IMG/VR virus record: IMGVR_UViG_3300023179_004149 | Span: 186,001-250,000 of that record | Length of the DNA stretch: 64,000 nt | Strand: one strand, 5' to 3' | In this document: positions 1-46,187 of the stretch, in pieces | Layout of the letters: each line of letters opens with the position of its first letter | Numbering within the stretch: position 1 is the stretch's first letter | Notes under the pieces: model-generated | The model's database searches: none | What the model was told of the DNA's origin: nothing | Seen by the model: the letters and a program-made list of their open reading frames with translations, nothing else | Translations under genes and position numbers: made by a program

Positions 1-1
1 A

Positions 2-1069
2 ACTGACGGAGACGGTGAGGAAATGGGTTCAGAAGAAATGACTGCTGGTGATGATGAAGACGATGAAATGGGTGCTGATGATACTTTTAGTGCTGATGAT
101 TCGGATTCTGAAACGGATATAACAGAACCAGAAGTAATTGACTTAACAGACAAAACAGACGATGAGGTTATTAAACATTTTAACCTTATGACTCCAGCCG
201 ACGAAATCGAAGTTATTCAAACGCCAGAAGGTGGTGTTCAAATTAACATAAAACCTTCGAGCGAAGACGAAGAACCAGGGACGGAAGAACCTATGAGCGA
301 TGAGCCAAGTGATGAACCTATGGGTGAAAAACCAGGTGAAGAACCTGATGAGGAATCAACAGAAGAACTAGGCGATGAAGAAGGTGAAGACGATAACGAA
401 AAGATCGCAGAAGAAGCTGGTGAACCAGTTTACGAAATCGAAATCGATGAGGCTGAGGAAGAAGATGAATCAACAACAACAAACATGCATGATGAAAAAC
501 ACATGAAGAATGTGGACCAAGAAGAAACCGTTGATGAAATTAAACATATCCATAACAAAGCCTTAAAACATGTTCAAAATGTTAAAGAAAAAGAGTTACA
601 GGAAAGCTTGGTGACAACTCGCAAAAAGATCCAAGGTTTAATGGCTGAAAACAAACAAAAAGCTAAAGAGTTACAAGATATGACATCTTTAGTTAAAGAA
701 TTTAAGACTAAAGAAGTTGAATACAAATCAGCTATCAAAAATCTTAAAGGTAATTTACAAGAGGTTGCATTATTCACATCGAACCTTTCTTACATCGTAA
801 AATTATTAAGCGAGAACACAACTACTAAGGATGAAAAATTAGACATAATCAAGAGATTTGATAAAGCTAATAATTTATCTGAGTCAAGAGAAATCTACAA
901 CAGTCTTAATTCATTACTTAACGAAAGTAAGAAATCGGCGGATAAAGTAATCGAAGAACACGTTTTTAAAACACAAAAAACAAGTGGCGCTTCTAAAATT
1001 AATGAATCAACCGCTTATAAGAATCCACAACTCGAAAGAATGTTGGATATGATCAATAAAATGAAATAA
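2..1069 (+). CDS. Prohead core scaffold protein (T4 gp22-like), 5' end outside window
   Basis: Frame is open from position 2. Very acidic N-part, coiled-coil C-part, many (L/I)xE motifs, and it lies directly upstream of the major capsid gene as in the T4 gp22-gp23 order. Confidence 0.75.
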   Translation, partial: TDGDGEEMGSEEMTAGDDEDDEMGADDTFSADDSDSETDITEPEVIDLTDKTDDEVIKHFNLMTPADEIEVIQTPEGGVQINIKPSSEDEEPGTEEPMSDEPSDEPMGEKPGEEPDEESTEELGDEEGEDDNEKIAEEAGEPVYEIEIDEAEEEDESTTTNMHDEKHMKNVDQEETVDEIKHIHNKALKHVQNVKEKELQESLVTTRKKIQGLMAENKQKAKELQDMTSLVKEFKTKEVEYKSAIKNLKGNLQEVALFTSNLSYIVKLLSENTTTKDEKLDIIKRFDKANNLSESREIYNSLNSLLNESKKSADKVIEEHVFKTQKTSGASKINESTAYKNPQLERMLDMINKMK

Positions 1070-1100: not shown

Positions 1101-2756
1101 ATGGGTGCATTATTAGAATCAGGAAAAGTTGGTAACGTGTCGTTAAACCACTTAAAAAGAGTTCGTCAGGACGTTATCAATAGATGGGACAGCTTAGGCC
1201 TCTTAGAAGGTTTAACTGGTCATAGAAAAGAAAACATCGCTCAACTTTATGAAAACCAAGCTTCTTGGATGTTGAACGAATCAACAACATTGGGTACAGA
1301 AGGTTCATTTGAAACTGTTGTATTTCCAATCGTGAGGAGAGTATTCTCAAAATTATTAGCAAACGAAATCGTTTCAGTACAAGCATTAAACTTACCTATT
1401 GGTAAATTGTTCTACTTCGTACCAAAAATTGGTGAATCACGTTTCGATTCAACAAACGCACCGAAATCATTAGCTAACGCTAATATTAACTATGGTGCTG
1501 GTACAGGTTCAACTGGTGGTAACAACATGATGAGTATGGTATCTGGTAACGACTTCTCAGATAACAACAACCTTTATGATGGTTTCTATGGTGATGACGC
1601 TTTCTTTGATAAATCAAAAGGTAAATATACTACTTTAACAGCCTCAACTTACGGTTCGGGTTATACATTTAACTCAACATCAACATCTGGTTTTGCGGTT
1701 GCTAACCAAACTGGTATCACATCTGGTAATACAGGTATTGTAAAATTAACTTTCACAATGGGTAACGGTTTTGATTGGGAAAACATTGAAGACTTTATGT
1801 CATCTATGGTAATCACATCATCTAACCCTTCAGTTTCAGCGGTTGATTTCTATTTCCCAAGTCAGAAATACGGTAATCAGTTAATGGACTCAAACGGTGT
1901 GGTTTATGTTGCAATCCCTAACACAGGTTCAACAACAATAGCAATAACTGGTTTAACAGCTACAGCTAAGCAGTACGCTTCTCTTGAATTAGCTGATGAT
2001 ATGGGCGAAGTTTCTTTCGAACTTAAGTCTGTAACTGTATCAGTTATTGAAAGAAAATTAAGAGCGCAGTGGTCACCAGAACTTGCTCAGGACGTTAGTG
2101 CGTTCCATAACATTGACGCTGAGGCTGAATTAACAGCTTTATTGTCAGAGCAGGTAGCTGCTGAAATCGACAGGGAAATCCTTAAAGACCTTAGAAGAGG
2201 TGCTGCATGGAGATTATACTGGGATTATAAAGGTGCAACAGGTCGTGGTATCGATATTAACGCAGCTGGTGCTTTCTATACTCAGAAAGAATGGAACCAA
2301 ACATTGGTTACAGCAATCAACCAGGTTTCTGCACAGATCCACAAAGCAACATTAAGAGGTGGTGCAAACTTCATCGTATGTTCTGCTGAGGTATCAGCTA
2401 TCTTTGATGACTTGGAATATTTCCACGTATCAAACGCCGCTCCAGATCAGGACAAGTATAACATGGGTATTGAGAGAGTGGGTGCTTTAGCTGGTCGTTA
2501 CCAGGTTTACCGTGACCCTTACTTCCCTGCTGACACGATCCTTATCGGTCACAAAGGTACTTCATTGTTAGATACTGGTTACATCTACGCTCCATATGTA
2601 CCATTGCAATTAACACCAACAATGTATAATCCGTTCACTTTCGCCCCTGTGAAAGGTATCATGACTCGTTACGCTAAGAAGATGGTTAACAACCGTTTCT
2701 ATGGTGTGGTTAAGGTACAGAACGTTGTAACATTCGGTATCGATTCATTCAGATAA
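1101..2756 (+). CDS. gp23: Major capsid protein, T4 gp23-like
   Basis: Motifs FPIVRRVF, VSVQALNLPIGKLFY, RKLRAQWSPELAQD, AEIDREI, YAPYVPLQ, GIMTRYA. The N-terminal region ends MLNE|ST at residue 60, a plausible prohead-protease site. Confidence 0.97.
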   Translation: MGALLESGKVGNVSLNHLKRVRQDVINRWDSLGLLEGLTGHRKENIAQLYENQASWMLNESTTLGTEGSFETVVFPIVRRVFSKLLANEIVSVQALNLPIGKLFYFVPKIGESRFDSTNAPKSLANANINYGAGTGSTGGNNMMSMVSGNDFSDNNNLYDGFYGDDAFFDKSKGKYTTLTASTYGSGYTFNSTSTSGFAVANQTGITSGNTGIVKLTFTMGNGFDWENIEDFMSSMVITSSNPSVSAVDFYFPSQKYGNQLMDSNGVVYVAIPNTGSTTIAITGLTATAKQYASLELADDMGEVSFELKSVTVSVIERKLRAQWSPELAQDVSAFHNIDAEAELTALLSEQVAAEIDREILKDLRRGAAWRLYWDYKGATGRGIDINAAGAFYTQKEWNQTLVTAINQVSAQIHKATLRGGANFIVCSAEVSAIFDDLEYFHVSNAAPDQDKYNMGIERVGALAGRYQVYRDPYFPADTILIGHKGTSLLDTGYIYAPYVPLQLTPTMYNPFTFAPVKGIMTRYAKKMVNNRFYGVVKVQNVVTFGIDSFR

Positions 2757-2806: not shown

Positions 2807-3634
2807 TTATAACATCATCTGAACCATTCTTCGTTTCACACGATCAATATATTCCTCTGAAACCAATTCTCTAGAGGTTAATTCATATTTGGTGTTACCC
2901 AGTGATTTAACCATTTTTTTAGCCATTTCCAGACAGGCTAATACATTACTAACCACAACTATCTCATGGGGGCTGTGCATCCTCTCATAGCCGACAGAAT
3001 AGTTAATACAGGTAAAGTCATATAGGCGTTTTAACGCTGATACATCTGTATAAGGATGATTACCTAAACACTTTCTAGAATACCCCCTCATATTCGACTG
3101 GAATATTGGTTCTATTTTCTGAAAAAATTCAGAATCCAATTCAAATAATTGAACCCCATCTGAACGATATGAAATCCAATCATGATACGGCGCATCAAAT
3201 TGAATGGCATATCCCACGTTCTTAAAAAAATTACGATCCGATAAATAAGAACCTAAACAACCAACCTCCTCAGCTACAAAAAAAGCGGCTTTCATTATGT
3301 CGGTGTCTTTTAATATTTCCAAACAAACAAATACGCCAGCTTTATCATCACCGCCAATACCTGTACGTCGACCATCTGGTGTCATTGCGAATAATACATC
3401 ACCAGCGTCACATACATCCATTTCCGTTATAGGGTGTACAGTATCAATATGTGAAACCACACACGGGTAAACCTCAGCCAAGCCCTTTGTAACGTATACG
3501 TTTCCGTATTCATCGGAATATGCCGATAAGTTATGTGCTTGACAATAATCTAGGATATATTGTGTCATTTTGCTTTCTTTGCCCGAGAATGACGGAACGG
3601 ACAGTACATTGATTAATCTTTGTTTTAGTTCCAT
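2807..3634 (-). CDS. Zinc exopeptidase, M20/M28/M42-like
   Basis: HIDTVH, GIGGDDKAG, EEVG, D and C-terminal H metal-ligand motifs. Confidence 0.85.
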   Translation of the reverse strand: MELKQRLINVLSVPSFSGKESKMTQYILDYCQAHNLSAYSDEYGNVYVTKGLAEVYPCVVSHIDTVHPITEMDVCDAGDVLFAMTPDGRRTGIGGDDKAGVFVCLEILKDTDIMKAAFFVAEEVGCLGSYLSDRNFFKNVGYAIQFDAPYHDWISYRSDGVQLFELDSEFFQKIEPIFQSNMRGYSRKCLGNHPYTDVSALKRLYDFTCINYSVGYERMHSPHEIVVVSNVLACLEMAKKMVKSLGNTKYELTSRELVSEEYIDRVKRRMVQMML

Positions 3635-20321: not shown

Positions 20322-20894
20322 TTACATACCGCTGCTAAATAAAACCTGAGCTTTTTCCAATAAATCATGACTTAATATAACATCACTGATTTCGGGATAA
20401 TCCAGTGTATCTGGTGTTACCAATAAAAACTCGTAGTTACCAGCGTCAACTTGAAATTCCTGAGCGTCATCTGTTACTTTCAATAAATTTTTATTATATT
20501 GATCGTTAACATAACTCATAACCGCCAAAGCTAAATCCTCCTCTGTTACATTGTCTTCCCAACCATCAGCTGGTACCATATATGTACCGTCTTCGTTCGA
20601 TTCCTCTTCTTGAGGAATAGACAAATAATCTTGCATAGCATGATAAATATCACCACCAAAACCATCACCGATACAATATAACACATCACCAGTATCAGGA
20701 TTCTTTAAAAGATATTGGTTATTATCAAACCCAACCATTTGGAATGGTTCTCTAACCACGATAGGTTCACTCATGCTCGGTTCCATGTCATCCATATAAG
20801 CCGACGGATCATCAGGGTGATGAAGTTCGTTTCTCATGGTGTACTCCATAATCATTTGAACCTGGCTCTCTGTTAGTATTAATTTTTTGCTCAT
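20322..20894 (-). CDS. Acidic hypothetical protein with ILTESQV leader
   Basis: MSKKLILTESQVQMIME start, TATTTATA upstream. Confidence 0.65.
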   Translation of the reverse strand: MSKKLILTESQVQMIMEYTMRNELHHPDDPSAYMDDMEPSMSEPIVVREPFQMVGFDNNQYLLKNPDTGDVLYCIGDGFGGDIYHAMQDYLSIPQEEESNEDGTYMVPADGWEDNVTEEDLALAVMSYVNDQYNKNLLKVTDDAQEFQVDAGNYEFLLVTPDTLDYPEISDVILSHDLLEKAQVLFSSGM

Positions 20895-20947
20895 ATTTTT
20901 TATATATAAATAGCGGGAAATAGTATAAAAAACCTCGTGTGGTGTTA

Positions 20948-25036: not shown

Positions 25037-26008
25037 TTAGTATCTAAGTATCTGTTTCATTCTTGCAATCTGTTCGTTAAGAGCTTTAGACGTTTCGTCT
25101 TCTTCTTCAGGTTCATCATTTTCCATCATATCTTTACCCTCTTCTTCAGTTTCTTCGTACATACCGCATTCATCACATGGTTCACCTTCTGTGTGCATGT
25201 GATCCATACCCATTTCGTGCATATCGTGGTGCATGTCAGACATATCCATACCCTCATCTTCCATACCTGGTTCTTCATTCATCCAAGTTTCATCAACCCA
25301 AGATTCGTCAGTCGGTAAATAACCTTCTTCGTAAACCTTACCTTTAGCGCCAGCTCTTAAAGCCATTTCACTTTGCCCATCTTCTTTCATATTAGGTAAA
25401 CCACTCTTCTTTCCACCAACCTCAGTTGATCCTTTAGGTGATGCTGTTGCTTTTTTAGCTTGATCAAAAGGCTTTTCAACTGGTTTTTTAACCTGTGTTT
25501 CTTGTGGTTTTCCCTTACCACCCGTTTTAGCTTGTTCAAATGGTTTTTCTGTTGGTTTTGGTGCTCTTGTCTCTTGCTTAGTAGCTGTACCGCTCGTAGA
25601 ATTGGCCATTTTTTCTTCACCTGGATTGCTCACGGTTGAAACCTTATGCATATTAACAGTGTGACCCTCGCCAGCTTTAATACCATTCAAAACGTGCTTA
25701 GTTGCTGCGTTTTTAACGACCTCGTCTTCTTTAAGGCCAGGTTTTTTAATACCTGGGTTAGAAACCGTCTTTTGGGACTTTAAATCACCACCCTTCAAAC
25801 CCGATTTAACGTGCTTAGTTGCTGCATTTTTAATACTATCACCACCAGTTTTAGGTAATGAGTTTTCATCTGCCATTGAAGCGTGAGATTCGCCGTCAAC
25901 TTCTTTCATACCTTTTACAATATGTTTTGTGGCGTCTTTGGCAACCGTACCTGCGGTTCCAGGAGTTTTTGTCGCTGGCTTAGGTGCCTGTGTTTTTTTA
26001 GTATCCAT
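25037..26008 (-). CDS. Low-complexity repeat protein ending in leader-like helix
   Basis: Repeats (K)NAATKHV x3, VSNPG x2, EKPF(E/D)QAK x2, an acidic tail, and C-terminal ALNEQIARMKQILRY. Confidence 0.75.
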   Translation of the reverse strand: MDTKKTQAPKPATKTPGTAGTVAKDATKHIVKGMKEVDGESHASMADENSLPKTGGDSIKNAATKHVKSGLKGGDLKSQKTVSNPGIKKPGLKEDEVVKNAATKHVLNGIKAGEGHTVNMHKVSTVSNPGEEKMANSTSGTATKQETRAPKPTEKPFEQAKTGGKGKPQETQVKKPVEKPFDQAKKATASPKGSTEVGGKKSGLPNMKEDGQSEMALRAGAKGKVYEEGYLPTDESWVDETWMNEEPGMEDEGMDMSDMHHDMHEMGMDHMHTEGEPCDECGMYEETEEEGKDMMENDEPEEEDETSKALNEQIARMKQILRY

Positions 26009-26533: not shown

Positions 26534-26791
26534 ATGAACCAAAACGAATACGTGGAAGAAGAAGAAATAACCGAAGAAAGTGGATCTGATTCTGGTTCAT
26601 TTGGTAACCCAAAAGGCGCAGGTAAAGTGTGGGATTCTGGCACCAAACGTGGTAAAGCCAACCCAATATCAAATCACGGCGAATGGGAGTCGGGTGTAAC
26701 AAGAGGCCGCGCCAACCCAGTTAAAACCATGGGCGAAGCCCTGGATAATGAATTAAATGAAATGAAAAAGTGGATGACTAAGTTAGATTAA
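26534..26791 (+). CDS. Small protein with two W(D/E)SGxxRGxANP repeats
   Basis: WDSGTKRGKANPI and WESGVTRGRANPV, C-terminal ELNEMKKWMTKLD. Confidence 0.7.
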   Translation: MNQNEYVEEEEITEESGSDSGSFGNPKGAGKVWDSGTKRGKANPISNHGEWESGVTRGRANPVKTMGEALDNELNEMKKWMTKLD

Positions 26792-29859: not shown

Positions 29860-30840
29860 ATGAAAAAAGTAAATTTAAACGAACAAATCGTTAGAATGAG
29901 ATCCATTATGGGGCTCAATGAATCAAAAAGAACCGAAGCAGATGCCCAGAGAATACTCGCTGGCGTTGAAAACGCTGAGACTATAGTAAAACAATTCGCC
30001 CAGGGTGACCAATCAAAAGACCAAAAGAATATACCCATTATGGCATCCATATATAAAAATTTTAACTATACCGATGTTAAAAATATAGTGGATGTTATGA
30101 ACGATTATAATGATTTGGTTACTAAAAATAGGGTTAAACCTATTCAAATAGCCAAGGGTGTTTTATCAATAGGGGATAAATCCTTTAATGATTTTATTAG
30201 GTTTTCTGAATATATTCACGGTGAAAAGAACAAATATGCGGCACCTCAAAAAGGTTCAAGTGTTGATGCTGATTTCATCTCTAATAAAAAACCTATGTGG
30301 TCGGGTAATAATATCGATATCTATGAAGGTGATGAGGTTGGTAAATGTATCGCATACACCATGGGTGGTTTAACTGGTAGAGGTTATAGCTTCTGTATCG
30401 GTCAACCAGGTAATACCGTGTATCAATCTTACAGAGACACCAAAGTTTCATCATTCTATTTCGTGGTGGATAAAAACCACTTTAAAACCAATGAAGACGG
30501 TAGTGTAAATCTTGATGATCCATTACACATTGTGGTGTTCGATAATACACAACACGGTATAGAACTTACAGATGCTAACAACACAACTGGTAAAATCGCT
30601 GAACCATTTGGTACCAATTCAGATATATATGTTGATTATCTTAAAAATAAAGGCGTTCCAGTTGATCAACTCATCAATAAACCAAAAACCGATCAGGAAA
30701 GAAAAGAAGATGAATTGTTAGGTAGACCCAATCCAAGCCTTGAATGGTTTGTAAAATTACCGATTGATTTAAAATCAAAATACATAGGTAGAGGACACCA
30801 ATTAACAAACGATCAATTCGATTATCTCATAGGTAAATAA
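29860..30840 (+). CDS. Leader-tagged hypothetical protein
   Basis: Starts MKKVNLNEQIVRMRSIMGLNE. Contains GRGYSFCIG...YFVVD. Confidence 0.75.
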   Translation: MKKVNLNEQIVRMRSIMGLNESKRTEADAQRILAGVENAETIVKQFAQGDQSKDQKNIPIMASIYKNFNYTDVKNIVDVMNDYNDLVTKNRVKPIQIAKGVLSIGDKSFNDFIRFSEYIHGEKNKYAAPQKGSSVDADFISNKKPMWSGNNIDIYEGDEVGKCIAYTMGGLTGRGYSFCIGQPGNTVYQSYRDTKVSSFYFVVDKNHFKTNEDGSVNLDDPLHIVVFDNTQHGIELTDANNTTGKIAEPFGTNSDIYVDYLKNKGVPVDQLINKPKTDQERKEDELLGRPNPSLEWFVKLPIDLKSKYIGRGHQLTNDQFDYLIGK

Positions 30841-30841
30841 T

Positions 30842-32372: not shown

Positions 32373-32578
32373 CTTTCCATATAACCCGTCATTTGATCGG
32401 TTGCACCCAAATCTGTACCAGTCCTAATCTCAGCGTCTTCGCCGAATGAATCCCTGAATCCTGGGGGTATTGAGGTGGCACCAACACCAACGGTGTTATC
32501 ACCACCCTCAAGCACATCTGACCATTGTTTGATTTTTTTGATTTCCTGTTCCAATGATATTTTTTCTGTTTTTTTCAT
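32369..32578 (-). CDS. Small protein with leader-like N-terminus
   Basis: SLEQEIKKIKQW...LE, TATTTATT upstream. Confidence 0.6.
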   Translation of the reverse strand: MKKTEKISLEQEIKKIKQWSDVLEGGDNTVGVGATSIPPGFRDSFGEDAEIRTGTDLGATDQMTGYMES

Positions 32579-32646
32579 TTTTTTTGTGTTTTTAAAATAA
32601 ATAGTTGAACTTTGGTCATGAGCATATATTCTTATGATTTGGTAAT

Positions 32647-32670
32647 GGGATAGGGGATAGGGGGCTTGGG
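32647..32670 (+). other. Intergenic G-quadruplex-forming motif
   Basis: GGG-ATA-GGGG-ATA-GGGGG-CTT-GGG in an AT-rich divergent intergenic region. Confidence 0.5.
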
Positions 32671-32691
32671 TATTAAGAACGTGTAAATTTT

Positions 32692-32720
32692 AAAAAAGCG
32701 GGTAAATTACCCGCTTTTTT
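32692..32720. terminator. Terminator-like hairpin
   Basis: aaaaaagcgggt-aaatt-acccgcttttt. Confidence 0.65.
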
Positions 32721-32748
32721 TATATATTTATATGTATAAAACATATAA

Positions 32749-35382: not shown

Positions 35383-35383
35383 C

Positions 35384-36502
35384 ATGAAACTAAACGAACA
35401 AATATCAAGAATGAAATCCATCATGGGTATCAAAGAATCTATACGTGCTTCCGAAGCAACAAACCAAATAGATTCAATCTTAACCGTATTACACGGTAAG
35501 AGAAACCTGGCATTCATTACATTTGGTGATCTAAATCCAACAAATAAACAAACGGTGACTAAACTAATCAACTCAGACCCCTCTTTAAACTCAATACACG
35601 TCAAAAAGAATCCTCTTATGGGATTTGTGATATATAGAGAGGGACACGAGAAAGAAGCCCAGGAATTGGCTAATTTGGCCAATAGATACGGTGGTTATTT
35701 ATCCGTGGATGCAACCAAAGAAGATTCAATCAGAATCGGACAATTGCTCGATTACGATCCTCAAGATATTCAAGATTATATAAACAAACATTATGATGAA
35801 TATGGCGTGAATATTCGCACTGGTAACTTGTTTGAATTTGATTCACCCGATCAAAACCCATCCGCTATTTCAGTTCTGGGGTTGGATGAGGTGGCTAAAA
35901 CAGTGAGTGATTTACCTGCCGATACTGGCCTATACCACCAAACAAATATTAATATTGGAGACCAGTTTGTGTTATACTCAGCATCAGAAGATAAAGTCTA
36001 TGGTGGGATTAATATATATAATACAGATGAAGACCCTAATGTTTATATGGTGTCACGTGTGTCAGCCAACGAAAGTTTCGGCCCCCTATTGTATGATATG
36101 ATGTTATCATACGTATATCCTAAACCACTCATTCCAGATCGCAATACGATATCAAAAGATGCAATAAAGGTTTGGACATATTATTTCAATAATAGAAATG
36201 ATATAAAAAAGGAACCAATAGATATTGATGATCAATTATATAGCACAATCTATCCCTACGAACGAGAAATCGATCCCGATGTTCTAAAAGATCTACTTTT
36301 TGAACCCGAATACAAAGATACAATACACGAGTTGGATATCTATAATTCCAAATATATCGGAAAACCTTTGAATATACAACCGCTGTTAATTAACGCCAAT
36401 AAACAACTAAAATTAAAAAATGTAAACCTAAACGACTTAATCAGTAGATCGGGTAAGCATTACGACCAATCAAAAGGTGTACCCAGTGATTACGACATAT
36501 GA
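35384..36502 (+). CDS. Leader-tagged two-module protein, C-terminal GNAT-like
   Basis: MKLNEQISRMKSIMGIKE, internal LFE/LDE, VSRVSANESFGPLLYD...SKDAIKVW. Confidence 0.7.
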   Translation: MKLNEQISRMKSIMGIKESIRASEATNQIDSILTVLHGKRNLAFITFGDLNPTNKQTVTKLINSDPSLNSIHVKKNPLMGFVIYREGHEKEAQELANLANRYGGYLSVDATKEDSIRIGQLLDYDPQDIQDYINKHYDEYGVNIRTGNLFEFDSPDQNPSAISVLGLDEVAKTVSDLPADTGLYHQTNINIGDQFVLYSASEDKVYGGINIYNTDEDPNVYMVSRVSANESFGPLLYDMMLSYVYPKPLIPDRNTISKDAIKVWTYYFNNRNDIKKEPIDIDDQLYSTIYPYEREIDPDVLKDLLFEPEYKDTIHELDIYNSKYIGKPLNIQPLLINANKQLKLKNVNLNDLISRSGKHYDQSKGVPSDYDI

Positions 36503-36900
36503 AACTTAACGAACAAATAACAAAAATGAAATCTATGATGGGACTAAAAGAAAATATCCAATACTATGGAATTGTTAACCCAGAAGATAGAAATTGGCTC
36601 AGAATCAAAGGAAGAAAATCCTATAGCGGCGGCGAACTCTCACCAATCATCATAGATGGCGTTATGGTCGGTGGAATACATATAGATAAAATGTCGGGCG
36701 TGTGGGGTATCGATTATCTCGAAATTAAACCAGAATTCCAAAACAAAGGTACCCTAAGAAAAATCATATACGATCAAGCTGACGATGGTGTGGTTAAATT
36801 CATTAGCGCAAGCGATGAACTCCAACAAAAATTAACTACCTATGGTGAAGTAACAACCGATCCAAACACGGATATAACAACATTAACTATTACAAAATGA
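36499..36900 (+). CDS. Leader-tagged GNAT-like acetyltransferase
   Basis: MKLNEQITKMKSMMGLKE, IDYLEIKPEFQNKG (motif A-like). Confidence 0.7.
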   Translation: MKLNEQITKMKSMMGLKENIQYYGIVNPEDRNWLRIKGRKSYSGGELSPIIIDGVMVGGIHIDKMSGVWGIDYLEIKPEFQNKGTLRKIIYDQADDGVVKFISASDELQQKLTTYGEVTTDPNTDITTLTITK

Positions 36901-37517
36901 ACCTTAACGAACAATTAAATATAATGAAAACCATGATGGGTATCAAAGAAGATGATATAATCATCGATAAAAATCCCAACATTATGCACTTTTTTCATGG
37001 TGGTGACCTGGATGAGGTTAAACAAGACCTCATCCAAAGATCCGACAGACAAGTTCATGGCCCTGGCCTTTATCTTACAACAAATTGGGAGAGAGCAAAG
37101 AAATACGCCAAAGGCGGTAGAAAAATGTATATTGTGTCTGTGGAGAAAGGCAATAATCTCGATGATAAAGACATCGATATGGTTGCGCTCACACAATTCC
37201 TTAAACAAAACCTTTCACCCAAAAAAGTACAATATGTGCTCGATAGAGCCAATACCAGATTGCACGGTGGTAAAATACCAGCTTATATCGTTAATAACAT
37301 ACTTATAGATAGCGGATTCCTCAAATCAAATTTTTCATTAATGTGGAAAACATTCCTTATAGGTGTCGGCATTGATTACGTTCTTGATGAAACAGCTTTC
37401 GGCGGCGAAGGACAAATGATGGTATTATACAACACCAATAAAATAAAAAATATCAGGAGAATCATGCCAAATGATAAACTTCCAACATACGATTTAAGAC
37501 CATACAATGAAACTTAA
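36897..37517 (+). CDS. Leader-tagged ADP-ribosyltransferase-fold protein
   Basis: MNLNEQLNIMKTMMGIKE, FFHGG...GPGLYLTT...AKKYA. Confidence 0.7.
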   Translation: MNLNEQLNIMKTMMGIKEDDIIIDKNPNIMHFFHGGDLDEVKQDLIQRSDRQVHGPGLYLTTNWERAKKYAKGGRKMYIVSVEKGNNLDDKDIDMVALTQFLKQNLSPKKVQYVLDRANTRLHGGKIPAYIVNNILIDSGFLKSNFSLMWKTFLIGVGIDYVLDETAFGGEGQMMVLYNTNKIKNIRRIMPNDKLPTYDLRPYNET

Positions 37518-38409
37518 CGAACAACTGAATAAAATGAAATCAATGATGGGATTACAAACCATCAACGAATACGTCACACAACATGATGTATATCTTCGTG
37601 ACTATTTTAATATGACCGAAGAGCAAAAGAAAAACTCTTTGCCCTTTATGTACCCATGGTTGTTCAGCGATTTTCTTGAAGAAAAAGATATCGAATTTAA
37701 AAGACCAACAAAAGCTTATTTTGATGCTTACGGTGAAGAACAACCTGGTGATGAATATGAGGATTATGAAATCGTTGATATCTTACAACACAAAGATAAA
37801 CCAGTGTTCGACGCTTTCGCCGATTATCTTTTTGATAAAGTGGAACGCAATGAACTTTCGGTTGACGATACAGAATATCCAGCCTGGTCATATATAACAC
37901 ACCCAAAATTGATAACAAACCAATGGTTAATACACTTCACCGAAGAACCATGGAAAATAGCTCGTGAAGGATTCACACGTGGTGTATCTGAATTAGACAA
38001 GTTGCACCTAACAACAAGACTCGGCGAATTCGATAAAAAATACGGCGGCTATAACTTCGCATTTAGAGCCGATATATATAAAAGATACGCAAGAAGAGGT
38101 TATATGCACGGAGGCGGATATAAATACGGAAACGAAGCAGTTATGTTCATTGGATCTGGTATAGAAGTCATACACCACGGCGATGAAGAACCACAAGTAA
38201 TCTTCTGGGGTAAAAAAGCAAGAAATATCGTGCCGATAACACAGGAATACGGCGACGACTATGCGGTACACAATATTAAAAAAGGCGGTATTGTTTACAA
38301 AAGCCAAGACCTGGACGACGTGGTTTCTTGGGTTATGAGAAACTATGATAGATATAAAAATGTGATTCAATACGAACCCACAAGAACAAAAGAACCTGAC
38401 AAATATTAA
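37507..38409 (+). CDS. Leader-tagged protein, possible ART fold
   Basis: MKLNEQLNKMKSMMGL..INE, WLIHFT...EGF...GYNFAF...EEPQVIF. Confidence 0.6.
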   Translation: MKLNEQLNKMKSMMGLQTINEYVTQHDVYLRDYFNMTEEQKKNSLPFMYPWLFSDFLEEKDIEFKRPTKAYFDAYGEEQPGDEYEDYEIVDILQHKDKPVFDAFADYLFDKVERNELSVDDTEYPAWSYITHPKLITNQWLIHFTEEPWKIAREGFTRGVSELDKLHLTTRLGEFDKKYGGYNFAFRADIYKRYARRGYMHGGGYKYGNEAVMFIGSGIEVIHHGDEEPQVIFWGKKARNIVPITQEYGDDYAVHNIKKGGIVYKSQDLDDVVSWVMRNYDRYKNVIQYEPTRTKEPDKY

Positions 38410-38410
38410 T

Positions 38411-38995
38411 ATGAACCTTAACGAACAAATCTCCAGGATAAAAGAAATGATGGACATAAACGAAGCACTTCAACCCATCACCGTTTATCACGGATCCAAT
38501 ACCAAAATCACAAACTTCGTGGATGACTTTGTGGGCGGAGAACAAGCCAACGACCTGGAAGGGCCTGGCATATACTTCACAACAATAGCGGAAAATGCCG
38601 AATATTTTGGAACATACGTACATGAAGTAACAATAACACCAAGAAAACTACTAACCGAAAGCCCAAATGGGGGCACCACCATCGAATTAACAAAATTAGC
38701 CAAAATGGCACCCGATTGGGAAAGCACAGCTCAAAATTGGGACGAAAACCCACAGATAGGTTTAAATAAAGCTATCAGAGACTTTATTTCATATAACCAC
38801 AACCAAAAAGATAGGTTCCTACAGGTATGGATAGACTTCTATAAAAATGACCCAGTGGATTATGTTAGAAACTGTGTTAAACTCGGATATGATGGTATCG
38901 TTGTTAATAGAGATGTTATAGACGGAAAACGACTTAAACACTATATCATATATAACCCAAGCATAATACAAATAAAAAAAGTAACCCAGGTATAA
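38411..38995 (+). CDS. Leader-tagged ADP-ribosyltransferase-fold protein (ART-PolyVal-like)
   Basis: MNLNEQISRIKEMMDINE, VYHGS...GPGIYFTT..ENAEYF...GYDGIVV...YIIYNP..IQI. Confidence 0.8.
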   Translation: MNLNEQISRIKEMMDINEALQPITVYHGSNTKITNFVDDFVGGEQANDLEGPGIYFTTIAENAEYFGTYVHEVTITPRKLLTESPNGGTTIELTKLAKMAPDWESTAQNWDENPQIGLNKAIRDFISYNHNQKDRFLQVWIDFYKNDPVDYVRNCVKLGYDGIVVNRDVIDGKRLKHYIIYNPSIIQIKKVTQV

Positions 38996-39016: not shown

Positions 39017-41602
39017 TTACTCTAATGCGTTTAATACTTTTTCCTTTATTGTTTGAACACGATTATGATTCGATTTCGCCATCTTTTCAACAATCAAAGC
39101 CCTCAACCGATCAGCCACCTTAGGGTCCTTCAATCTATATACCTTTAATAACGAATCGTACTTACCCAATAAAGATTGATCCTCATCCGATATACCAATC
39201 AAATTATAAAACACATACCCATTAACCAATTGTAAAACCCTATCCTTACCAATTTGATCCTTTAGTTTGATGAACCGTTGAACAATCTCATCATCTGATT
39301 CCTTCTTAACATTTAATTCTTTATATAATGGTTCCAATTCAGCGCCAACCAAATCAAAATACATCTCCCTCAACTCAGCTGGAAACTTATTAACAACAAA
39401 CGGCGATATGGTCTTAACTATCGTATCGGTTAACACATGGACAATATGTTTGATAACATCAAACCCCTTGTTTTTGTTAAATAAACCAAATAACACATCG
39501 TATCGACCATGATTTATCAATTCCCTGACATAAATGTCTGTGTTCATGTTATTAATCGTTCTACCATGATACAAGACACCAAAGGCATCCTCAACAAGAA
39601 CATCCAAAGATTGTGACCAATATGATTCCATCCCCTTCAACACACCCCTTTCATTACGATACTTTAACTCATACTCCGTTAACCACCCAATCACAAAATT
39701 CTTAAACTTCTGATTGAACACCCCATAATAAGGCCCAGTAAAATGACAATAAATACCAGAGGCAAATCTACCAAGAGGATCCTTAATATTCCAATCACCC
39801 TCCTTTATTAAATAAAAAACAAAACTATTATCCCTTATCATATTGCCAACACCCGCACCATAACCTTCACCACCATCATCAATAGTTGATTTGATCATCG
39901 TTTGCTTTATATCCTTAATACCAGAAAGATTCTCACATGTGCTAAAATGATCACTATCTCCCATATTTGCAATATCATGCGAATGCCTGGATATAACAGC
40001 ATACATCTTACCTTCACCACCAGCCCTGGTCATCGAATCCAAATAACTCGTGTATCTTTTCAATAAACCAACATCATACTTTTGCAATAACTTGGTTAAT
40101 TTAACCTCCTGGTTACTCTTCTCATCCTTCACCTTGTTACCGTCAAAATCAACCAACACAAAACCATTATCGGCAATAACACGATCAATATCATGCCTTA
40201 ACTTATCACTAATATTAACATCCAAATTTAAAGTCGGTGTTTTCCTGGTCGGCGTAATCATCTTCCCAGTATCGAGATCATAATATAAACGATATACATT
40301 CTTACCAAATAAATTATCCATATTAGCATCAAAACGCTTTTGATAGGCCCTGGCTTGCTTGGATAAATTCAACTCAATGGCCTCACCCAACCACATCACC
40401 CCCCTCATGCGGGAAACCTCTTCATTTAATTTATTTAACGTCTCTTCTGCAAATTCTAATGACTCTTTCTCATTATCATCAAGCTCTCTATTAATACCAC
40501 TTATAACTTTTCGTATTATATCCTCTTCCCACCTAAACGCATACAACACATACGATAACAAACTCTCACCACGCCTAATAATTCTCTTATCATATATTAT
40601 TTTCATTAAGTTATAATTAATTATCATCTTAATGTTTTTATCCGTTATGTTATTGGCCATATCAGGGTCTTCAATTAATTTGGTATGTAATGATTGCAAA
40701 TAAACTTTCTTTAACTCATCTCGCAACCCATCAAAATCAAAAAACCAATTATAATACCTCTTAACCAAAACCTTGCTACGTTCCAAAGGCATCGAGTTTA
40801 ACTCATCCATCTGTTTCTTATCATAAATTACATCATTTGATAATAACCTGTTTTCTAATGAGTCGTGTGTTCCAATAACACCTTTCTTATTTATATTAAT
40901 AAATAAGGTGTTTATATCAACAGACTTCATATCACCATCAATCTTATTAAGATCATAGATAACCGAACCATGTAACGTATTATCCCAATCCCAAACACCT
41001 GAAACATTAACACCATTATAGCCATTCCACTCCATAATCCTGGTGGAAAATGAAGCCGAACTACTGGCTTGCGTTTTATTATACATCGAATTAAAATCAC
41101 TCGCGGCTTGTTTTAACATATTGATAAACTCACGATACTTTGGAACCTTTAAACCCAAATAACTTAAATTATTAACAACAACCAAATACCGCTTGCTTAT
41201 ATCGCCATGCCCATATAAAAAACTATAAAATATATCATTCAACTCCTTCAATGTGTTAAATAACCACTTACCTTGTTCATTGCTCTTTACTCGATATAAA
41301 TTTTTATAGAAATCCATATTAACCCTATAAACACTATCACCAACCTGAATCAACCCAGACATATCCTTAAAAGCAGATCCATATTTTTTATCATAATCAG
41401 CTTTATCCCTTAACTTATAAGTTGAAAAATACATACCCGAACCAAAGTGACCCGTGCCCCTACCTTGCATTCTCCATATGTTATCAGAACCATACGGTTT
41501 TAAATTAGATAAATTAACACTACCCGAATGATAGTTGTAATCGGCCTCAATTAATAAAACCATTTTTTTTATTTGTTGTAACTCAGAAAGTAACTTATCC
41601 AT
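39017..41602 (-). CDS. Fused two-cassette leader-tagged polyprotein, N-module ART-like
   Basis: N-leader LLSELQQIKKMV.LIE, YHSG...GHFGSGMYFST, and a second internal leader LNKLNEEVSRMRGVMWLGE at 40391-40438. Confidence 0.75.
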   Translation of the reverse strand: MDKLLSELQQIKKMVLLIEADYNYHSGSVNLSNLKPYGSDNIWRMQGRGTGHFGSGMYFSTYKLRDKADYDKKYGSAFKDMSGLIQVGDSVYRVNMDFYKNLYRVKSNEQGKWLFNTLKELNDIFYSFLYGHGDISKRYLVVVNNLSYLGLKVPKYREFINMLKQAASDFNSMYNKTQASSSASFSTRIMEWNGYNGVNVSGVWDWDNTLHGSVIYDLNKIDGDMKSVDINTLFININKKGVIGTHDSLENRLLSNDVIYDKKQMDELNSMPLERSKVLVKRYYNWFFDFDGLRDELKKVYLQSLHTKLIEDPDMANNITDKNIKMIINYNLMKIIYDKRIIRRGESLLSYVLYAFRWEEDIIRKVISGINRELDDNEKESLEFAEETLNKLNEEVSRMRGVMWLGEAIELNLSKQARAYQKRFDANMDNLFGKNVYRLYYDLDTGKMITPTRKTPTLNLDVNISDKLRHDIDRVIADNGFVLVDFDGNKVKDEKSNQEVKLTKLLQKYDVGLLKRYTSYLDSMTRAGGEGKMYAVISRHSHDIANMGDSDHFSTCENLSGIKDIKQTMIKSTIDDGGEGYGAGVGNMIRDNSFVFYLIKEGDWNIKDPLGRFASGIYCHFTGPYYGVFNQKFKNFVIGWLTEYELKYRNERGVLKGMESYWSQSLDVLVEDAFGVLYHGRTINNMNTDIYVRELINHGRYDVLFGLFNKNKGFDVIKHIVHVLTDTIVKTISPFVVNKFPAELREMYFDLVGAELEPLYKELNVKKESDDEIVQRFIKLKDQIGKDRVLQLVNGYVFYNLIGISDEDQSLLGKYDSLLKVYRLKDPKVADRLRALIVEKMAKSNHNRVQTIKEKVLNALE

Positions 41603-41605: not shown

Positions 41606-42850
41606 CTATTTTAATTTATCAAACTCTCTATCATAAGAAGATTTTTCATCCAACGGATTCTTTAGATGATTGGTTACATAATCCTCAAATCGGAAAAAAG
41701 CACCATTAATTTTATTCAAAAGATCTTCTGAAATATCTGGCGTTATTTTTAAAGGTTCATTAACCTCATTCAAACCCATAACCTTTTTTATTTGATTAAG
41801 CCCCTCATCTAACATATCTGAACTAATACCTAAAGTATTTAAATACTTATTAAAATCCATATCATACACTTCATACCATTTAATGTTGTTACTCAAATAT
41901 AAAGAATAACTATCTGGTAAATAGGTCATCAAAAACCTAGCATCATCAATATCCATGTTAAAATCCATTATAACATACACATACCCCAAACCAGCATAAT
42001 CTTCCCAATAATTCTCACTACCAACTTGTGCAAAACACCAATTACTATAACAACCCAATTGCTGCATAGCCTCATAATCATTAACCTTGATTACCAGAAC
42101 ATCGTTTTTATCATATACCAAATCAGCATCAAGATTCGGCAATAAATCCAAAACATGTTTACGACCCGTTTCAGCGCCATCACCAATATAACTCATGGTC
42201 TTACTCAAATGATCAAAACCCGCAACAATATCTTTAAAACTCCTACCACTACGAAATAGTTTAGGCAACATCTCATCGTGTTTTTTCTTAGGTAAAGCCT
42301 GTAATATTTTATTAATAACCCTCAACCCCTCATACACTTTTTTAAAATTATATGAAATAAACTGTTGGTAATTCGGGTCGGCTGTATCAATGTTATATAT
42401 ATATTCTTTAATTGGTTTCATCATATTACGCTTAATAATATCTGATAATTTACCCCAACTTTTAACCAAATAACTCCTTTCCTTTAACATCTCATATAAA
42501 GACATTACATGAAATCTATTATCCTGGGTTTCATATTTGTAGTCGGTTAAATTACCTGGAACAGGAAATAATTGTTTATCATACACTCTTACTAAATCGT
42601 AAAAATCCGCAACAATATCCATATTCCTCTCAGTATATTTACTCTGGTCAGATTCAAACCTATTCATCTGATAATAAAAATCAGTAACCAACTTCGTAAA
42701 ATTATTACCGTTTGTAAGATCAACAATAGCTTCCTTGACACGAGGCTCTAACTTACCCGAATTAAAATAAACTTTATCGGCTAATTGAACATTCTCATTC
42801 AAACCCATCATTACCCTCATACGGAAAACTTGCTCGTTTAATTTATTCAT
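41606..42850 (-). CDS. Leader-tagged hypothetical protein
   Basis: MNKLNEQVFRMRVMMGLNE, LGCYSNWCF module, internal LDEGLNQIKKVMGLNE near the C-terminus. Confidence 0.75.
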   Translation of the reverse strand: MNKLNEQVFRMRVMMGLNENVQLADKVYFNSGKLEPRVKEAIVDLTNGNNFTKLVTDFYYQMNRFESDQSKYTERNMDIVADFYDLVRVYDKQLFPVPGNLTDYKYETQDNRFHVMSLYEMLKERSYLVKSWGKLSDIIKRNMMKPIKEYIYNIDTADPNYQQFISYNFKKVYEGLRVINKILQALPKKKHDEMLPKLFRSGRSFKDIVAGFDHLSKTMSYIGDGAETGRKHVLDLLPNLDADLVYDKNDVLVIKVNDYEAMQQLGCYSNWCFAQVGSENYWEDYAGLGYVYVIMDFNMDIDDARFLMTYLPDSYSLYLSNNIKWYEVYDMDFNKYLNTLGISSDMLDEGLNQIKKVMGLNEVNEPLKITPDISEDLLNKINGAFFRFEDYVTNHLKNPLDEKSSYDREFDKLK

Positions 42851-43453
42851 TTATACTCCACTAAAACTTAATTGGTTATTATCATTTATATATAAATCAA
42901 CTGACCCCATATCACGTGATGCTTTCATTAATATATTCTCGTCCTCATCATCATAACCCCTATCAAAAAAACCAGCACCGTGACCATTACGTGTCAACCA
43001 AAAGTCATGACCAAGTTGTTCAGCACCAAACTCATTAATCGCCCTATGAATTAAATCCTCACCACATAACTGAATGAATTTCTTAATACCTATATAAGCA
43101 TCAATTAACGAATCTGACTCAATATCTTCACGACTGAATGATACAATACCCTTATTATTCAACTGCGATGTTAATCTAATTAATTTATCCAATTCGGTAT
43201 CATCCTCATCCTCATCATCGTCGTCATAAACACTATCATCACCTTGTTCATCTCTCAAAGATTCCTCCTCAGTCCATAATGCCGCTTCAATATACCCCAT
43301 CAATATCTTATTTATAATATCGGTAGATATATCAGATTCGTCTAATACACTACCATCATCCTGAATATCCTTGGCAAATTGATACCTACCCGAATTTTCA
43401 GATATACCCATTATCGCCCTCATGCGGGACACTTGTTCATTTAATTTATTCAT
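42851..43453 (-). CDS. Leader-tagged hypothetical protein (GHDFWLTRNGHGAGF motif)
   Basis: Start reassigned to MNKLNEQVSRMRAIMGISE at 43453. Confidence 0.75.
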   Translation of the reverse strand: MNKLNEQVSRMRAIMGISENSGRYQFAKDIQDDGSVLDESDISTDIINKILMGYIEAALWTEEESLRDEQGDDSVYDDDDEDEDDTELDKLIRLTSQLNNKGIVSFSREDIESDSLIDAYIGIKKFIQLCGEDLIHRAINEFGAEQLGHDFWLTRNGHGAGFFDRGYDDEDENILMKASRDMGSVDLYINDNNQLSFSGV

Positions 43454-43466: not shown

Positions 43467-44081
43467 TTATTTTGTTTCATAATTATCTGGTACCAGGTTA
43501 CTAAGATGCTCCACAAACGTATCAAACTCGAAAAATTTGGGATTGTATTTATATGGTACCTCTTTACCATCTGGACGTAAAACAACAACTTTATAATCAC
43601 TAAATTTACTATGAGTATCTCTAAATCCAGATATAATATCCACAATATAGGAATAATGATTCGTATCAGTTAATATAATTCTGAATTTGATCCTATCTGG
43701 TGTATTCTCGAATATATTAACCTTCACCACAACAGCTTTAACGTCACCAATATTTATTGTTTTACCCACATATGAATTAATTAGATCCTCTGAAAATATA
43801 CCAGATACATACCAGTGCTTATTCCCTGATTTATCAAGAATTGGTTTAAAATCACCAAACTCCAAATCTATAGGTTCACCAGAAACATCAACATCCGCAA
43901 CATCCGATTTTTTAAAATTACCAAATCTGCCAACTTTATCATCTGGCTTTAACTTCTTCCTGGTAGTGTCAAGATTCTTGGTCTTATTCCAATACCAATC
44001 AGAATCATCCCAAGATTCACTTAACCCCATCATCCGCCTGATGTTTTGAATCTCCTCATTTAATGTTTGTTTCTGTTTCAT
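43467..44081 (-). CDS. Leader-tagged hypothetical protein
   Basis: MKQKQTLNEEIQNIRRMMGLSE. Confidence 0.75.
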   Translation of the reverse strand: MKQKQTLNEEIQNIRRMMGLSESWDDSDWYWNKTKNLDTTRKKLKPDDKVGRFGNFKKSDVADVDVSGEPIDLEFGDFKPILDKSGNKHWYVSGIFSEDLINSYVGKTINIGDVKAVVVKVNIFENTPDRIKFRIILTDTNHYSYIVDIISGFRDTHSKFSDYKVVVLRPDGKEVPYKYNPKFFEFDTFVEHLSNLVPDNYETK

Positions 44082-45653: not shown

Positions 45654-46187
45654 ATGGTACTTACAGAACAAATAAATAGGATTAAAGAAATGATGGGATT
45701 AGATCCCAAAAAACGATTTGAGTATAAACCCATCACATATGAAGAATTTGATGACGCACTATCAGATATCTCCACATTAAACCTGGAAGACGATCAACTG
45801 GGTATACCTGAATTTAATCAGAATACCGATAATTTTTTATTACGAATCGATGACATCGACCTCTATATAAAAAATAGACAACAGTTACCAGAAAGTGGCC
45901 CCTATGAATTATTAATTGATAATAACGATGGCGATACCATAGGTTTCATTCGCGGAACCAAATTTAATAACATCCTTTCATTTAATCTCGTATATATTGC
46001 ACCAGAAGAAAGAGGTAATGGCATCGGTACCAGTATCTACCAATACTTTTTGAACCACGGTTATATAATGAAGACCGATAAGGAAATTAGTGATTCCACT
46101 CATTCCATATATACTAACCTCGCAAAATCTGAATATACGCCCATTATGTTCGCCGATCATAGAGTGGGACTGATTAAATCATCATAA
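45654..46187 (+). CDS. Leader-tagged GNAT-like acetyltransferase
   Basis: MVLTEQINRIKEMMGL, LVYIAPEERGNGIGTSIY (motif A), TATTTATA upstream. Confidence 0.8.
   Translation: MVLTEQINRIKEMMGLDPKKRFEYKPITYEEFDDALSDISTLNLEDDQLGIPEFNQNTDNFLLRIDDIDLYIKNRQQLPESGPYELLIDNNDGDTIGFIRGTKFNNILSFNLVYIAPEERGNGIGTSIYQYFLNHGYIMKTDKEISDSTHSIYTNLAKSEYTPIMFADHRVGLIKSS

What the first reader, a model, noticed from the sequence alone, without database searches (positions are those of the whole stretch)
1000..1069. The cargo leader looks like a copy of the scaffold C-terminal helix
Seen: the scaffold ends INESTAYK-NPQLERMLDMINKMK. Its NPQLERMLDMI aligns with NEQISRMKSIM (35384) and NEQIARMKQIL (C-terminus of 25037-26008), pattern N-x-Q-[LI]-x-R-M-x-x-[MI]-[ILM]. 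A weaker version ends the 26534 protein (ELNEMKKWMTKL). The motif therefore occurs at both N- and C-termini. Established: terminal amphipathic helices of scaffolds mediate coat or scaffold binding in P22 and herpesviruses. Inference: cargo proteins enter the prohead by mimicking the scaffold docking helix.
Basis: inference. Interest (0 to 1): 0.75.

Follow-up and report, generated by a model that had tools for sequence, protein, structure and literature searches.

The report
Cargo leaders copy the scaffold tail
In this 321-kb T4-like phage, the short leader on at least ten unrelated proteins that are probably packaged in the head is a version of the conserved helix that ends the scaffolding protein, which suggests, but does not prove, that cargo enters the prohead through the scaffold's own docking contact.

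Summary
The window lies in a 320,934-bp T4-like phage record. The gene before the gp23-type capsid gene is the scaffold, and it ends ...KINE|STAYKNPQLERMLDMINKMK*.

Ten unrelated proteins (window 29860-46187) start with M-x-LNEQ-phi-x-R-M-K-x-x-M-G-[LI]-x-E. Two further proteins carry the motif at the C-terminus and one carries it internally.

Within this genome alone, tail and leader are only weakly alike. At family level the link is clear:
- Profile against profile scores z about 6.7.
- The tail is the best-conserved scaffold segment in 80 relatives and in 135 of 150 database representatives.
- Some natural scaffold tails are almost leader sequences (...NEQFSRMKTLMGLNK*, ...PQIRRIKEMMGIVK*).
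- In the independent Flavobacterium phage immuto, the tail (SEQVSRWQKLAGIIK*) and two N-terminal leaders (SEQFRRMQKLAGIITE) are near-identical.

AlphaFold2 models the tail as a helix behind a disordered linker that holds an I-x-E protease site. Leaders end in the same [LI]-x-E site.

The mechanism remains inference: a shared docking helix released by the S77 prohead protease. The receptor (capsid protein or scaffold core) is unresolved, and the one complex prediction gave no answer. T4 itself does not show the resemblance. I rate this a new variant of the known capsid-targeting-sequence principle.

The parts
1..1069 (+). Scaffolding protein gene (gp22 position). Its 5' end lies 196 bases upstream of the window, and the full protein is 421 aa.
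   Evidence: It lies between the S77 protease and the gp23-type capsid gene. The AF2 model shows long helices plus acidic disordered stretches. No Pfam or PHROG family matches it.
998..1006 (+). I-N-E, the predicted S77 protease cleavage site in the linker before the tail.
   Evidence: [LI]-x-E-[ST] is conserved here in 80 relatives. It sits in the disordered segment 390-401 of the AF2 model. The T4 gp23 site LTE|A aligns with the capsid protein's LNE60.
1022..1066 (+). Scaffold C-terminal helix NPQLERMLDMINKMK, the 'tail' motif.
   Evidence: Helix 408-420 with pLDDT about 84. It is the best-conserved scaffold segment (0.79) and is kept in 135 of 150 database representatives.
1101..2756 (+). 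Major capsid protein of gp23 type. It is the candidate receptor, through its inner face or its N-terminal propeptide (aa 1-60, predicted cleavage at LNE60 = 1272-1280).
   Evidence: Pfam PF07068, 7.8e-76. The propeptide is as conserved as the core fold (0.88).
29860..29922 (+). N-terminal leader MKKVNLNEQIVRMRSIMGLNE of a 326-aa cargo protein.
35384..35437 (+).
36499..36552 (+). N-terminal leader MKLNEQITKMKSMMGLKE of a 133-aa cargo protein.
36897..36950 (+). N-terminal leader MNLNEQLNIMKTMMGIKE of a 206-aa cargo protein (weak DUF3990 match).
37507..37569 (+). N-terminal leader MKLNEQLNKMKSMMGLQTINE of a 300-aa cargo protein.
38411..38464 (+). N-terminal leader MNLNEQISRIKEMMDINE of a 194-aa ADP-ribosyltransferase (ART-PolyVal).
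42794..42850 (-). N-terminal leader MNKLNEQVFRMRVMMGLNE of a 414-aa cargo protein.
43397..43453 (-). N-terminal leader MNKLNEQVSRMRAIMGISE of a 200-aa cargo protein. The true start is this ATG, not the upstream TTG of the listed ORF.
44016..44081 (-). N-terminal leader MKQKQTLNEEIQNIRRMMGLSE of a 204-aa cargo protein.
45654..45707 (+). N-terminal leader MVLTEQINRIKEMMGLDP of a GNAT acetyltransferase. The likely start is 45654 rather than 45630, and no [LI]-x-E site follows.
40373..40435 (-). Internal copy NKLNEEVSRMRGVMWLGEAIE at about aa 391 of the 861-aa ORF 39017-41602.
   Evidence: E 0.05; weak.
25040..25081 (-). C-terminal copy LNEQIARMKQILRY* on a 323-aa low-complexity, acidic and lysine-rich protein.
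   Evidence: 12.8 bits, against a background maximum of 7.1.
26753..26788 (+). Doubtful C-terminal copy LNEMKKWMTKLD* on an 85-aa protein.
   Evidence: The sequence is present, but the leader HMM gives no hit at E<=0.5.

Best explanation
The last ~15 residues of the scaffolding protein and the ~18-residue leaders of the cargo proteins are versions of one portable docking helix. Its consensus is [NS]-[EP]-Q-phi-x-R-[MIW]-[KQ]-x-phi-[MA]-[GS]-phi.

Proposed mechanism:
1. The helix is tethered to its protein by a short linker that carries a [LI]-x-E site for the gp21-type (S77) prohead protease.
2. During prohead assembly the helix occupies a receptor site inside the prohead. That site evolved to hold the scaffold tail. 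It is most likely the inner face or N-terminal propeptide of the gp23-type capsid protein, as for scaffold C-termini in P22, SPP1, 80alpha and herpesviruses. Less likely, it is the scaffold core itself.
3. Any protein carrying the helix (ADP-ribosyltransferase, acetyltransferase, unknowns) is therefore built into the prohead together with the scaffold.
4. The protease then cuts at the flanking [LI]-x-E sites. Scaffold fragments and tags leave, and the freed cargo stays to be ejected with the DNA.

Shown: the shared motif, its conservation, its modular placement, the predicted helix and linker, and the presence of the protease.

Inferred: binding, the identity of the receptor, cleavage, packaging and ejection.
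For: - Motif identity at family level: profile-profile z about 6.7. A tail HMM from relatives ranks leaders first in this genome. Natural tails such as ...NEQFSRMKTLMGLNK* and ...PQIRRIKEMMGIVK* score 15-19 bits on the leader HMM, against a 7.1-bit background.
- Independent lineage: the tail of phage immuto and its two leaders share 10-11 of 14 residues, and the leaders are the best non-self hits of the tail in that genome.
- Conservation: the tail is kept in all 79 relatives in which an upstream ORF was found, in about 70 contigs of the immuto clade and in 135 of 150 representatives of a 3,269-member family. It is the most conserved scaffold segment.
- Structure: helix 408-420 follows a disordered linker that holds the INE site.
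- Modularity: the ten leader proteins share no other similarity. The motif also occurs at C-termini and internally here and in relatives.
- Protein-level selection: codons vary while residues are kept.
- System context: an S77 protease, a T4-type portal and a gp23 capsid protein are present. Leaders end in [LI]-x-E, like the capsid cleavage site that aligns with T4's. One cargo is an ADP-ribosyltransferase, like T4's packaged Alt (PMC9958956).
- Precedent: T4 propeptides target proteins to the core and are removed by gp21 (PMC9026906). The C-termini of herpesvirus scaffold and protease both bind the capsid protein (PMC8539031).
Against: - There is no direct evidence of binding, cleavage or packaging, and no proteomics exists for any member.
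- The one complex prediction (capsid protein plus leader) gave no answer.
- In this genome the tail is a diverged copy (RMLDMI against RMKSIM) and is not significant on its own.
- Relatives with the tail but no leaders (Mel-JY01, RM378, G006, G007) show that the tail's primary role does not depend on cargo.
- T4 shows no resemblance between tail and leader.
- In T4 the targeting sequence is thought to bind the core rather than the shell (PMC9026906), so the preferred receptor may be wrong.
Confidence: 0.6

Rival explanations
1. Like binds like. The leader does not contact the capsid protein. Instead it joins the scaffold core by bundling with scaffold tails, or by binding the site on a neighbouring scaffold subunit that normally receives a tail. 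Cargo is then a pseudo-subunit of the core, as proposed for T4 targeting sequences.
For: T4 propeptides are described as having affinity for the core, and cleavage is said to release interactions with core proteins (PMC9026906). Tail and leader are similar helices, and the hydrophobic positions recur at i, i+4, i+7, i+8 of the consensus. The scaffold N-terminal helix is also conserved (0.70).
Against: Where structures exist, scaffold C-terminal helices contact the capsid protein's N-terminal region (PMC9546572; PMC8539031).
Confidence: 0.25
2. The shared motif is a recognition or docking element for the S77 prohead protease. It appears on scaffold and cargo because both are substrates, not because they share an assembly receptor.
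For: Every copy lies within a few residues of a [LI]-x-E site. The protease's own C-terminal tail resembles the scaffold tail (DLMxK[IL], z 5.6).
Against: The capsid protein is also a substrate and lacks the motif. The cleavage site lies downstream of the motif in leaders but upstream of it in the scaffold, which does not fit one enzyme-substrate geometry. [quoted passage not shown] About 55 protease copies against hundreds of scaffold copies in T4 argues against one-to-one docking (PMC9958956).
Confidence: 0.07
3. The resemblance has no shared function. Leaders are an unrelated paralogous N-terminal module, for example an oligomerisation or regulatory tag, that happens to resemble a Met-rich amphipathic scaffold helix.
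For: The own-genome pairwise match is weak. The motifs are short. No cargo has been shown in a virion.
Against: Shuffle tests give p<=1e-4. Intermediate natural tails exist. Phage immuto shows an independent near-identity at an exact N-terminus followed by I-x-E.
Confidence: 0.06

Closest known systems
T4 capsid targeting sequence (CTS) of internal proteins IPII/IPIII, IPI and Alt (Mullaney & Black 1996; reviewed in PMC9026906 and PMC9958956)
   Same: A short N-terminal propeptide sits on diverse, non-essential proteins destined for the head. It ends in a gp21-type [LI]-x-E site and occurs in a phage with a gp20 portal, gp21 (S77) protease, gp22-position scaffold and gp23 capsid protein. One cargo is an ADP-ribosyltransferase, like Alt.
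   Different: The sequence is different and longer (LNEQ-phi-x-RMKxxMG[LI]xE against MKTYQEFIAE). Here the tag also occurs at C-termini and internally. Here it matches the scaffold's own C-terminal helix, which T4's tag does not. The T4 review calls the localisation mechanism 'mysterious'.
Herpesvirus UL26 protease and UL26.5 scaffold sharing one C-terminal capsid-binding tail (PMC8539031). From my own knowledge, the nested protease/scaffold genes of lambda (C/Nu3) are similar.
   Same: A non-scaffold protein is carried into the procapsid by the same terminal peptide that docks the scaffold, and that peptide is later removed by the maturation protease.
   Different: There the sharing comes from in-frame overlapping genes, concerns only the protease and is C-terminal. 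Here separate, unrelated genes carry a short copy, mostly at the N-terminus.
Encapsulin cargo-loading peptides (PMC8229669)
   Same: A short terminal peptide on otherwise unrelated cargo proteins binds the luminal face of an HK97-fold shell. It works at either terminus.
   Different: Encapsulins have no scaffold, no protease release and a different motif. Binding to the shell is solved there and only inferred here.
Engineered P22 virus-like particles loaded through fusions to the scaffold C-terminal domain
   Same: Cargo is encapsidated because it carries the scaffold's coat-binding C-terminal helices.
   Different: That system is man-made and uses a helix-turn-helix domain. This would be a natural, minimal equivalent.

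Membership tests
T4-type capsid targeting sequence system | A short terminal propeptide shared by otherwise unrelated proteins | tested here: met
   There are ten N-terminal leaders (E<=3e-6). Their mature parts share no similarity at E<=1e-3.
T4-type capsid targeting sequence system | The propeptide ends in a gp21-type [LI]-x-E cleavage site | tested here: met
   Nine of ten leaders end in or are closely followed by [LI]-x-E. The GNAT leader does not. Cleavage itself was not observed.
T4-type capsid targeting sequence system | The phage encodes an S77 prohead protease, a T4-type portal and a gp23-type capsid protein | tested here: met
   PF03420, PF07230 and PF07068 match.
T4-type capsid targeting sequence system | Sequence similarity to the T4 CTS (MKTYQEFIAE) | tested here: not met
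   The motif is different. The T4 CTS family is MKT[YF][QK]EF. So this is an analogue, not a sequence homologue.
T4-type capsid targeting sequence system | The tag is necessary and sufficient to package a protein into heads, and is removed in the virion | not testable with these tools
   This needs packaging assays and virion N-terminomics.
gp22-type scaffolding (prohead core) protein | The gene lies between the prohead protease and the major capsid gene. The protein is acidic and largely helical or disordered. | tested here: met
   The AF2 model is. The same arrangement is seen in T4, immuto and Mel-JY01.
gp22-type scaffolding (prohead core) protein | Detectable homology to T4 gp22 | tested here: inconclusive
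   There is no Pfam or PHROG match. The only resemblance to T4 gp22 is seen by eye at the N-terminal helix and at the tail (IVSVYAKVASRF).
Scaffold C-terminal coat-binding helix (P22 / SPP1 / herpesvirus type) | A helix at the extreme C-terminus behind a flexible linker, and the most conserved part of the scaffold | tested here: met
Scaffold C-terminal coat-binding helix (P22 / SPP1 / herpesvirus type) | The helix binds the major capsid protein | tested here: inconclusive
   The complex prediction of capsid protein plus leader gave 'no answer'.
Encapsulin cargo-loading peptide | A terminal peptide binds a pocket on the luminal face of an HK97-fold shell, with no scaffold or protease involved | tested here: not met
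   A scaffold and a protease are present. The comparison is used as a functional analogy only.

The most novel reading that the evidence does not exclude
In a large, mostly uncultured branch of T4-like phages, cargo loading works by natural mimicry of the scaffold tail. Any protein that acquires a ~15-residue copy of the scaffold's C-terminal docking helix, plus a protease site, is built into the prohead and later ejected into the host. The copy can sit at the N-terminus, at the C-terminus or internally. This would name the receptor logic behind capsid targeting sequences, which is still unknown in T4. It would also give a position-independent packaging tag for phage engineering.
Probability: 0.5. 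Interest if true: 0.75.

Novelty: new variant of a known kind. Interest (0 to 1): 0.62.

Why it matters
How T4-like phages select proteins for packaging into the head is unresolved. A 2023 review calls the localisation mechanism 'mysterious' (PMC9958956). These packaged proteins are often anti-defence enzymes that are injected with the DNA.

If the targeting tag is a copy of the scaffold's own docking helix, the question becomes testable. The receptor of the scaffold tail is then also the receptor of the cargo. One culturable phage (Flavobacterium phage immuto) offers a near-identical tail and leader pair for the experiment.

The finding also suggests how new cargo is recruited in evolution, by copying about 45 bases. 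It gives a minimal tag that may be usable for loading foreign proteins into phage heads. Finally, the leader identifies a cluster of at least ten candidate ejected proteins, including an ADP-ribosyltransferase and an acetyltransferase, in an uncultured jumbo phage.

Tried and rejected
- Complex prediction of the capsid protein (alignment A3) with the leader (A1): verdict 'no answer', ipSAE 0.00, controls not run. This is no evidence either way.
- AF2 of the ADP-ribosyltransferase cargo without an alignment: mean pLDDT 33, unusable.
- Leader HMM against this genome did not report the scaffold tail at E<100. BLAST of the genome's own tail ranked an unrelated internal peptide first.
- Search of immuto, LR756508, Mel-JY01 and RM378 with the leader alignment through the genome search found nothing. 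Full six-frame scans then found leaders only in immuto. LR756508 has only weak internal 'RLQKLAG' matches.
- G006 (78% capsid identity to immuto) and G007 have the tail but no leaders and no homologues of immuto's two leader proteins. Co-variation therefore rests on two lineages.
- T4: the gp22 tail has no look-alike at other protein termini. Similarity between the gp22 N-terminus (MLKEQLIAE) and the CTS is confined to the cleavage site and is not significant.
- The idea that the protease tail belongs to the same motif was only partly borne out. Protease tail against scaffold tail gives z 5.6. Protease tail against leader gives z 0.8, not significant.
- Codon comparison in immuto is inconclusive on whether the leaders are recent copies of the tail. 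Tail and leader 2 share 8 of 10 codons, tail and leader 1 share 3 of 11.
- No homologues of the 25037-26008 protein were found in five relatives.
- The DNA alignment of leader-coding segments shows no extended nucleotide repeat that would indicate a recombination cassette.

Full report
**What the window is.** The window is bases 186001-250000 of a 320,934-bp IMG/VR virus record with 34.5% G+C.
- Window 1101-2756 encodes a gp23-type major capsid protein (PF07068, 7.8e-76).
- Upstream in the genome lie a T4-type portal and an S77 (gp21-type) prohead protease interrupted by an intein. A 421-aa acidic protein follows and runs into the window up to base 1069.
- This is the T4 gene order portal, protease, scaffold, capsid. 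The 421-aa protein is therefore the scaffold by position and composition, although no Pfam or PHROG family matches it.
- The nearest named phages by capsid protein are an uncultured 484-kb phage, Flavobacterium phage immuto, Microcystis phage Mel-JY01 and Rhodothermus phage RM378, at 38-45% identity.

A leader HMM finds ten N-terminal copies, all in window 29860-46187 (E<=3e-6).
- It also finds C-terminal copies on the 25037-26008(-) protein and on a 126-aa ORF outside the window, and an internal copy in the 861-aa ORF 39017-41602(-).
- The leader consensus is M-x-LNEQ-phi-x-R-M-K-x-x-M-G-[LI]-x-E.
- The ten mature proteins share no other similarity. They include an ART-PolyVal ADP-ribosyltransferase, a GNAT acetyltransferase and a weak DUF3990 match.
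- Codons differ while residues are kept, so selection acts on the peptide and not on the RNA or DNA.

**Is the resemblance between scaffold tail and leader more than chance?**
- Within this genome alone it is barely so. The leader HMM does not report the tail, and BLAST with the tail does not rank leaders among its top hits.
- The picture changes with relatives. In the 79 of 80 IMG/VR relatives (capsid identity 53-74%) in which an upstream ORF was found, that ORF ends ...L-[IN]-E-S-[KT]-x-Y-E-N-P-Q-[FLI]-x-R-M-[KR]-D-[LI]-M-x-K-[IL]-K*. This consensus is closer to the leader than the copy in this genome is.
- A comparison of 19 leaders with 56 distinct tails scores 25.4, against 10.3 +/- 2.2 for column shuffles (p<=1e-4).
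- A tail HMM built only from relatives ranks four leaders as its four best non-self hits among 4,507 six-frame segments of this genome.
- A profile of the scaffold C-terminal domain finds 3,269 representatives in a library of 1.84 billion proteins. Of the best 150, 135 keep the tail pattern at the very C-terminus.
- Some of those tails are almost leader sequences...ENEQFSRMKTLMGLNK* (18.9 bits on the leader HMM) and ...NPQIRRIKEMMGIVK* (16 bits). The background maximum in this genome is 7.1 bits.

**Independent lineage.**
- More distant T4-like scaffolds end in the same kind of helix: immuto ...IISE|VSEQVSRWQKLAGIIK*, Mel-JY01 ...ILNE|SNNVVERMKKLAGIVK*, RM378 ...LERIKRLAGL*, LR756508 ...SRMQKLADIS*.
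- About 70 contigs of the immuto clade keep x-R-[MWF]-[QK]-K-L-A-G-[IL].
- A full six-frame scan of immuto finds exactly three copies of its variant: the scaffold tail and two ORFs that begin MKKQILSEQFRRMQKLAGIITE and MKKQILSEQFKRMQFLAGIITE.
- Using only the 22-residue tail as query, these two leaders are the best non-self hits in the genome (blastp-short E 0.002 and phmmer E 0.037 for the first).
- So in two lineages the leader resembles that lineage's scaffold-tail type (KLAGII in immuto, K-x-x-M-G-[LI] here). This is what a shared partner or descent from the tail predicts.
- Limits: Mel-JY01, RM378 and two complete genomes of the immuto clade have the tail but no leaders. T4's gp22 tail has no look-alike at other termini.

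**Anatomy.**
- AlphaFold2 with 33 scaffold sequences predicts an N-terminal helix, acidic disordered stretches and a long helical C-terminal domain. A disordered linker (390-401, containing KINE401) follows, and then a helix at 408-420 with pLDDT about 84.
- The tail is the most conserved scaffold segment (0.79, against 0.33-0.37 for the disordered parts).
- [LI]-x-E precedes the tail in relatives and follows nine of ten leaders.
- The capsid protein's LNE60 aligns with T4 gp23's LTE65|A cleavage site.
- The docking element is therefore always separated from its protein by a predicted S77 site, on whichever side is needed.

**Mechanism.**
- I propose that tail and leaders are one portable docking helix for a common receptor in the prohead, released by the protease.
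- Precedents: T4 propeptides target proteins to the core and are removed by gp21 (PMC9026906). [quoted passage not shown] The C-terminal ends of herpesvirus scaffold and protease both bind the capsid protein (PMC8539031). Encapsulin cargo peptides bind the luminal face of an HK97-fold shell (PMC8229669).
- The receptor is not settled. I favour the capsid protein, whose to-be-cleaved propeptide is as conserved as its core. The scaffold core is a serious alternative, by analogy with T4.
- The single complex prediction allowed gave no answer.

**Novelty.**
- Capsid targeting sequences and shared scaffold/protease tails are known.
- I found no report that a family of separately encoded, unrelated cargo proteins carries a short copy of the scaffold's own C-terminal helix, mostly at the opposite terminus. 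The T4 literature states that the localisation mechanism is unknown.
- I class this as a new variant of a known kind. The sequence relationship is well supported and the function is inferred.

Noticed in passing
Genome 183551-185353, 181505-183505 and 175756-178137 (outside the window, locus L093); window 22509-24953: Four genes carry inteins with LAGLIDADG or Hint domains: the S77 prohead protease, an AAA ATPase, a 793-aa ORF next to a terminase N-terminal piece, and a UvrD-type helicase. An intein inside a prohead protease is unusual.
   Followed up: partly
Genome 185300-185353 (protease C-terminus) and loci L002-L081: The prohead protease also ends in a conserved helix (here EDFMERLSSFLKK*; relatives KSLDLMKKLNDYLGY* or DRMKKLMGNLDTFLSK*; T4 gp21 DDAYMALAEAMKKAL*). 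It resembles the scaffold tail (DLMxK[IL], z 5.6) but not the leader (z 0.8). The protease may be recruited by a related tail.
   Followed up: partly
Genome 272827-273207 (+), locus L291:327-707: A 126-aa protein far from the cargo cluster ends ...KQLSEHINKMKKLMGLLSD*, a C-terminal copy of the leader motif. It has no Pfam match.
   Followed up: partly
Genome 20341-20961 (-), locus L292:341-961: A 206-aa protein begins MNKLNEALKKIKTMIALIE|S. This may be an eleventh, diverged leader (E 0.14).
   Followed up: no
Relatives G002:162779-163243(-) and G003:48139-49728(+): Relatives also carry C-terminal copies (...LNEEINKIKKLF*...LNEEINKMKKPLK*), so C-terminal placement of the tag recurs.
   Followed up: no
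Window 42851-43645 (-) and 45630-46187 (+): The leader suggests different starts from those in the mechanical ORF list: ATG at 43453 rather than TTG at 43645, and ATG at 45654 rather than 45630.
   Followed up: yes
Flavobacterium phage immuto MW353176.1, 125582-126823: The immuto scaffold gene is annotated 'DNA polymerase phi-like protein'. Its position before the capsid gene and its conserved tail indicate a scaffold. The label probably comes from its acidic low-complexity region.
   Followed up: partly
T4 NC_000866: 18966-19142 (-) and 73591-73923 (-): Besides IPII and IPIII, two more T4 ORFs begin with CTS-like peptides (MKTFKEFIKE..., MKTFKEFTS...ITEA). Their identity was not checked.
   Followed up: no
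Window 2807-3634 (-) and 4261-6414 (-): Directly after the capsid gene lie an M20/M42-type peptidase homologue and a 717-aa protein with two glycosyltransferase domains (GT1 and GT9-like). These are unusual neighbours for a head module.
   Followed up: no
Window 30842-31468 and 44167-45627: Inside the cargo cluster there are genes without a leader: a DUF4116 protein and a PcfJ-like protein. Not every gene of the cluster carries the tag.
   Followed up: no
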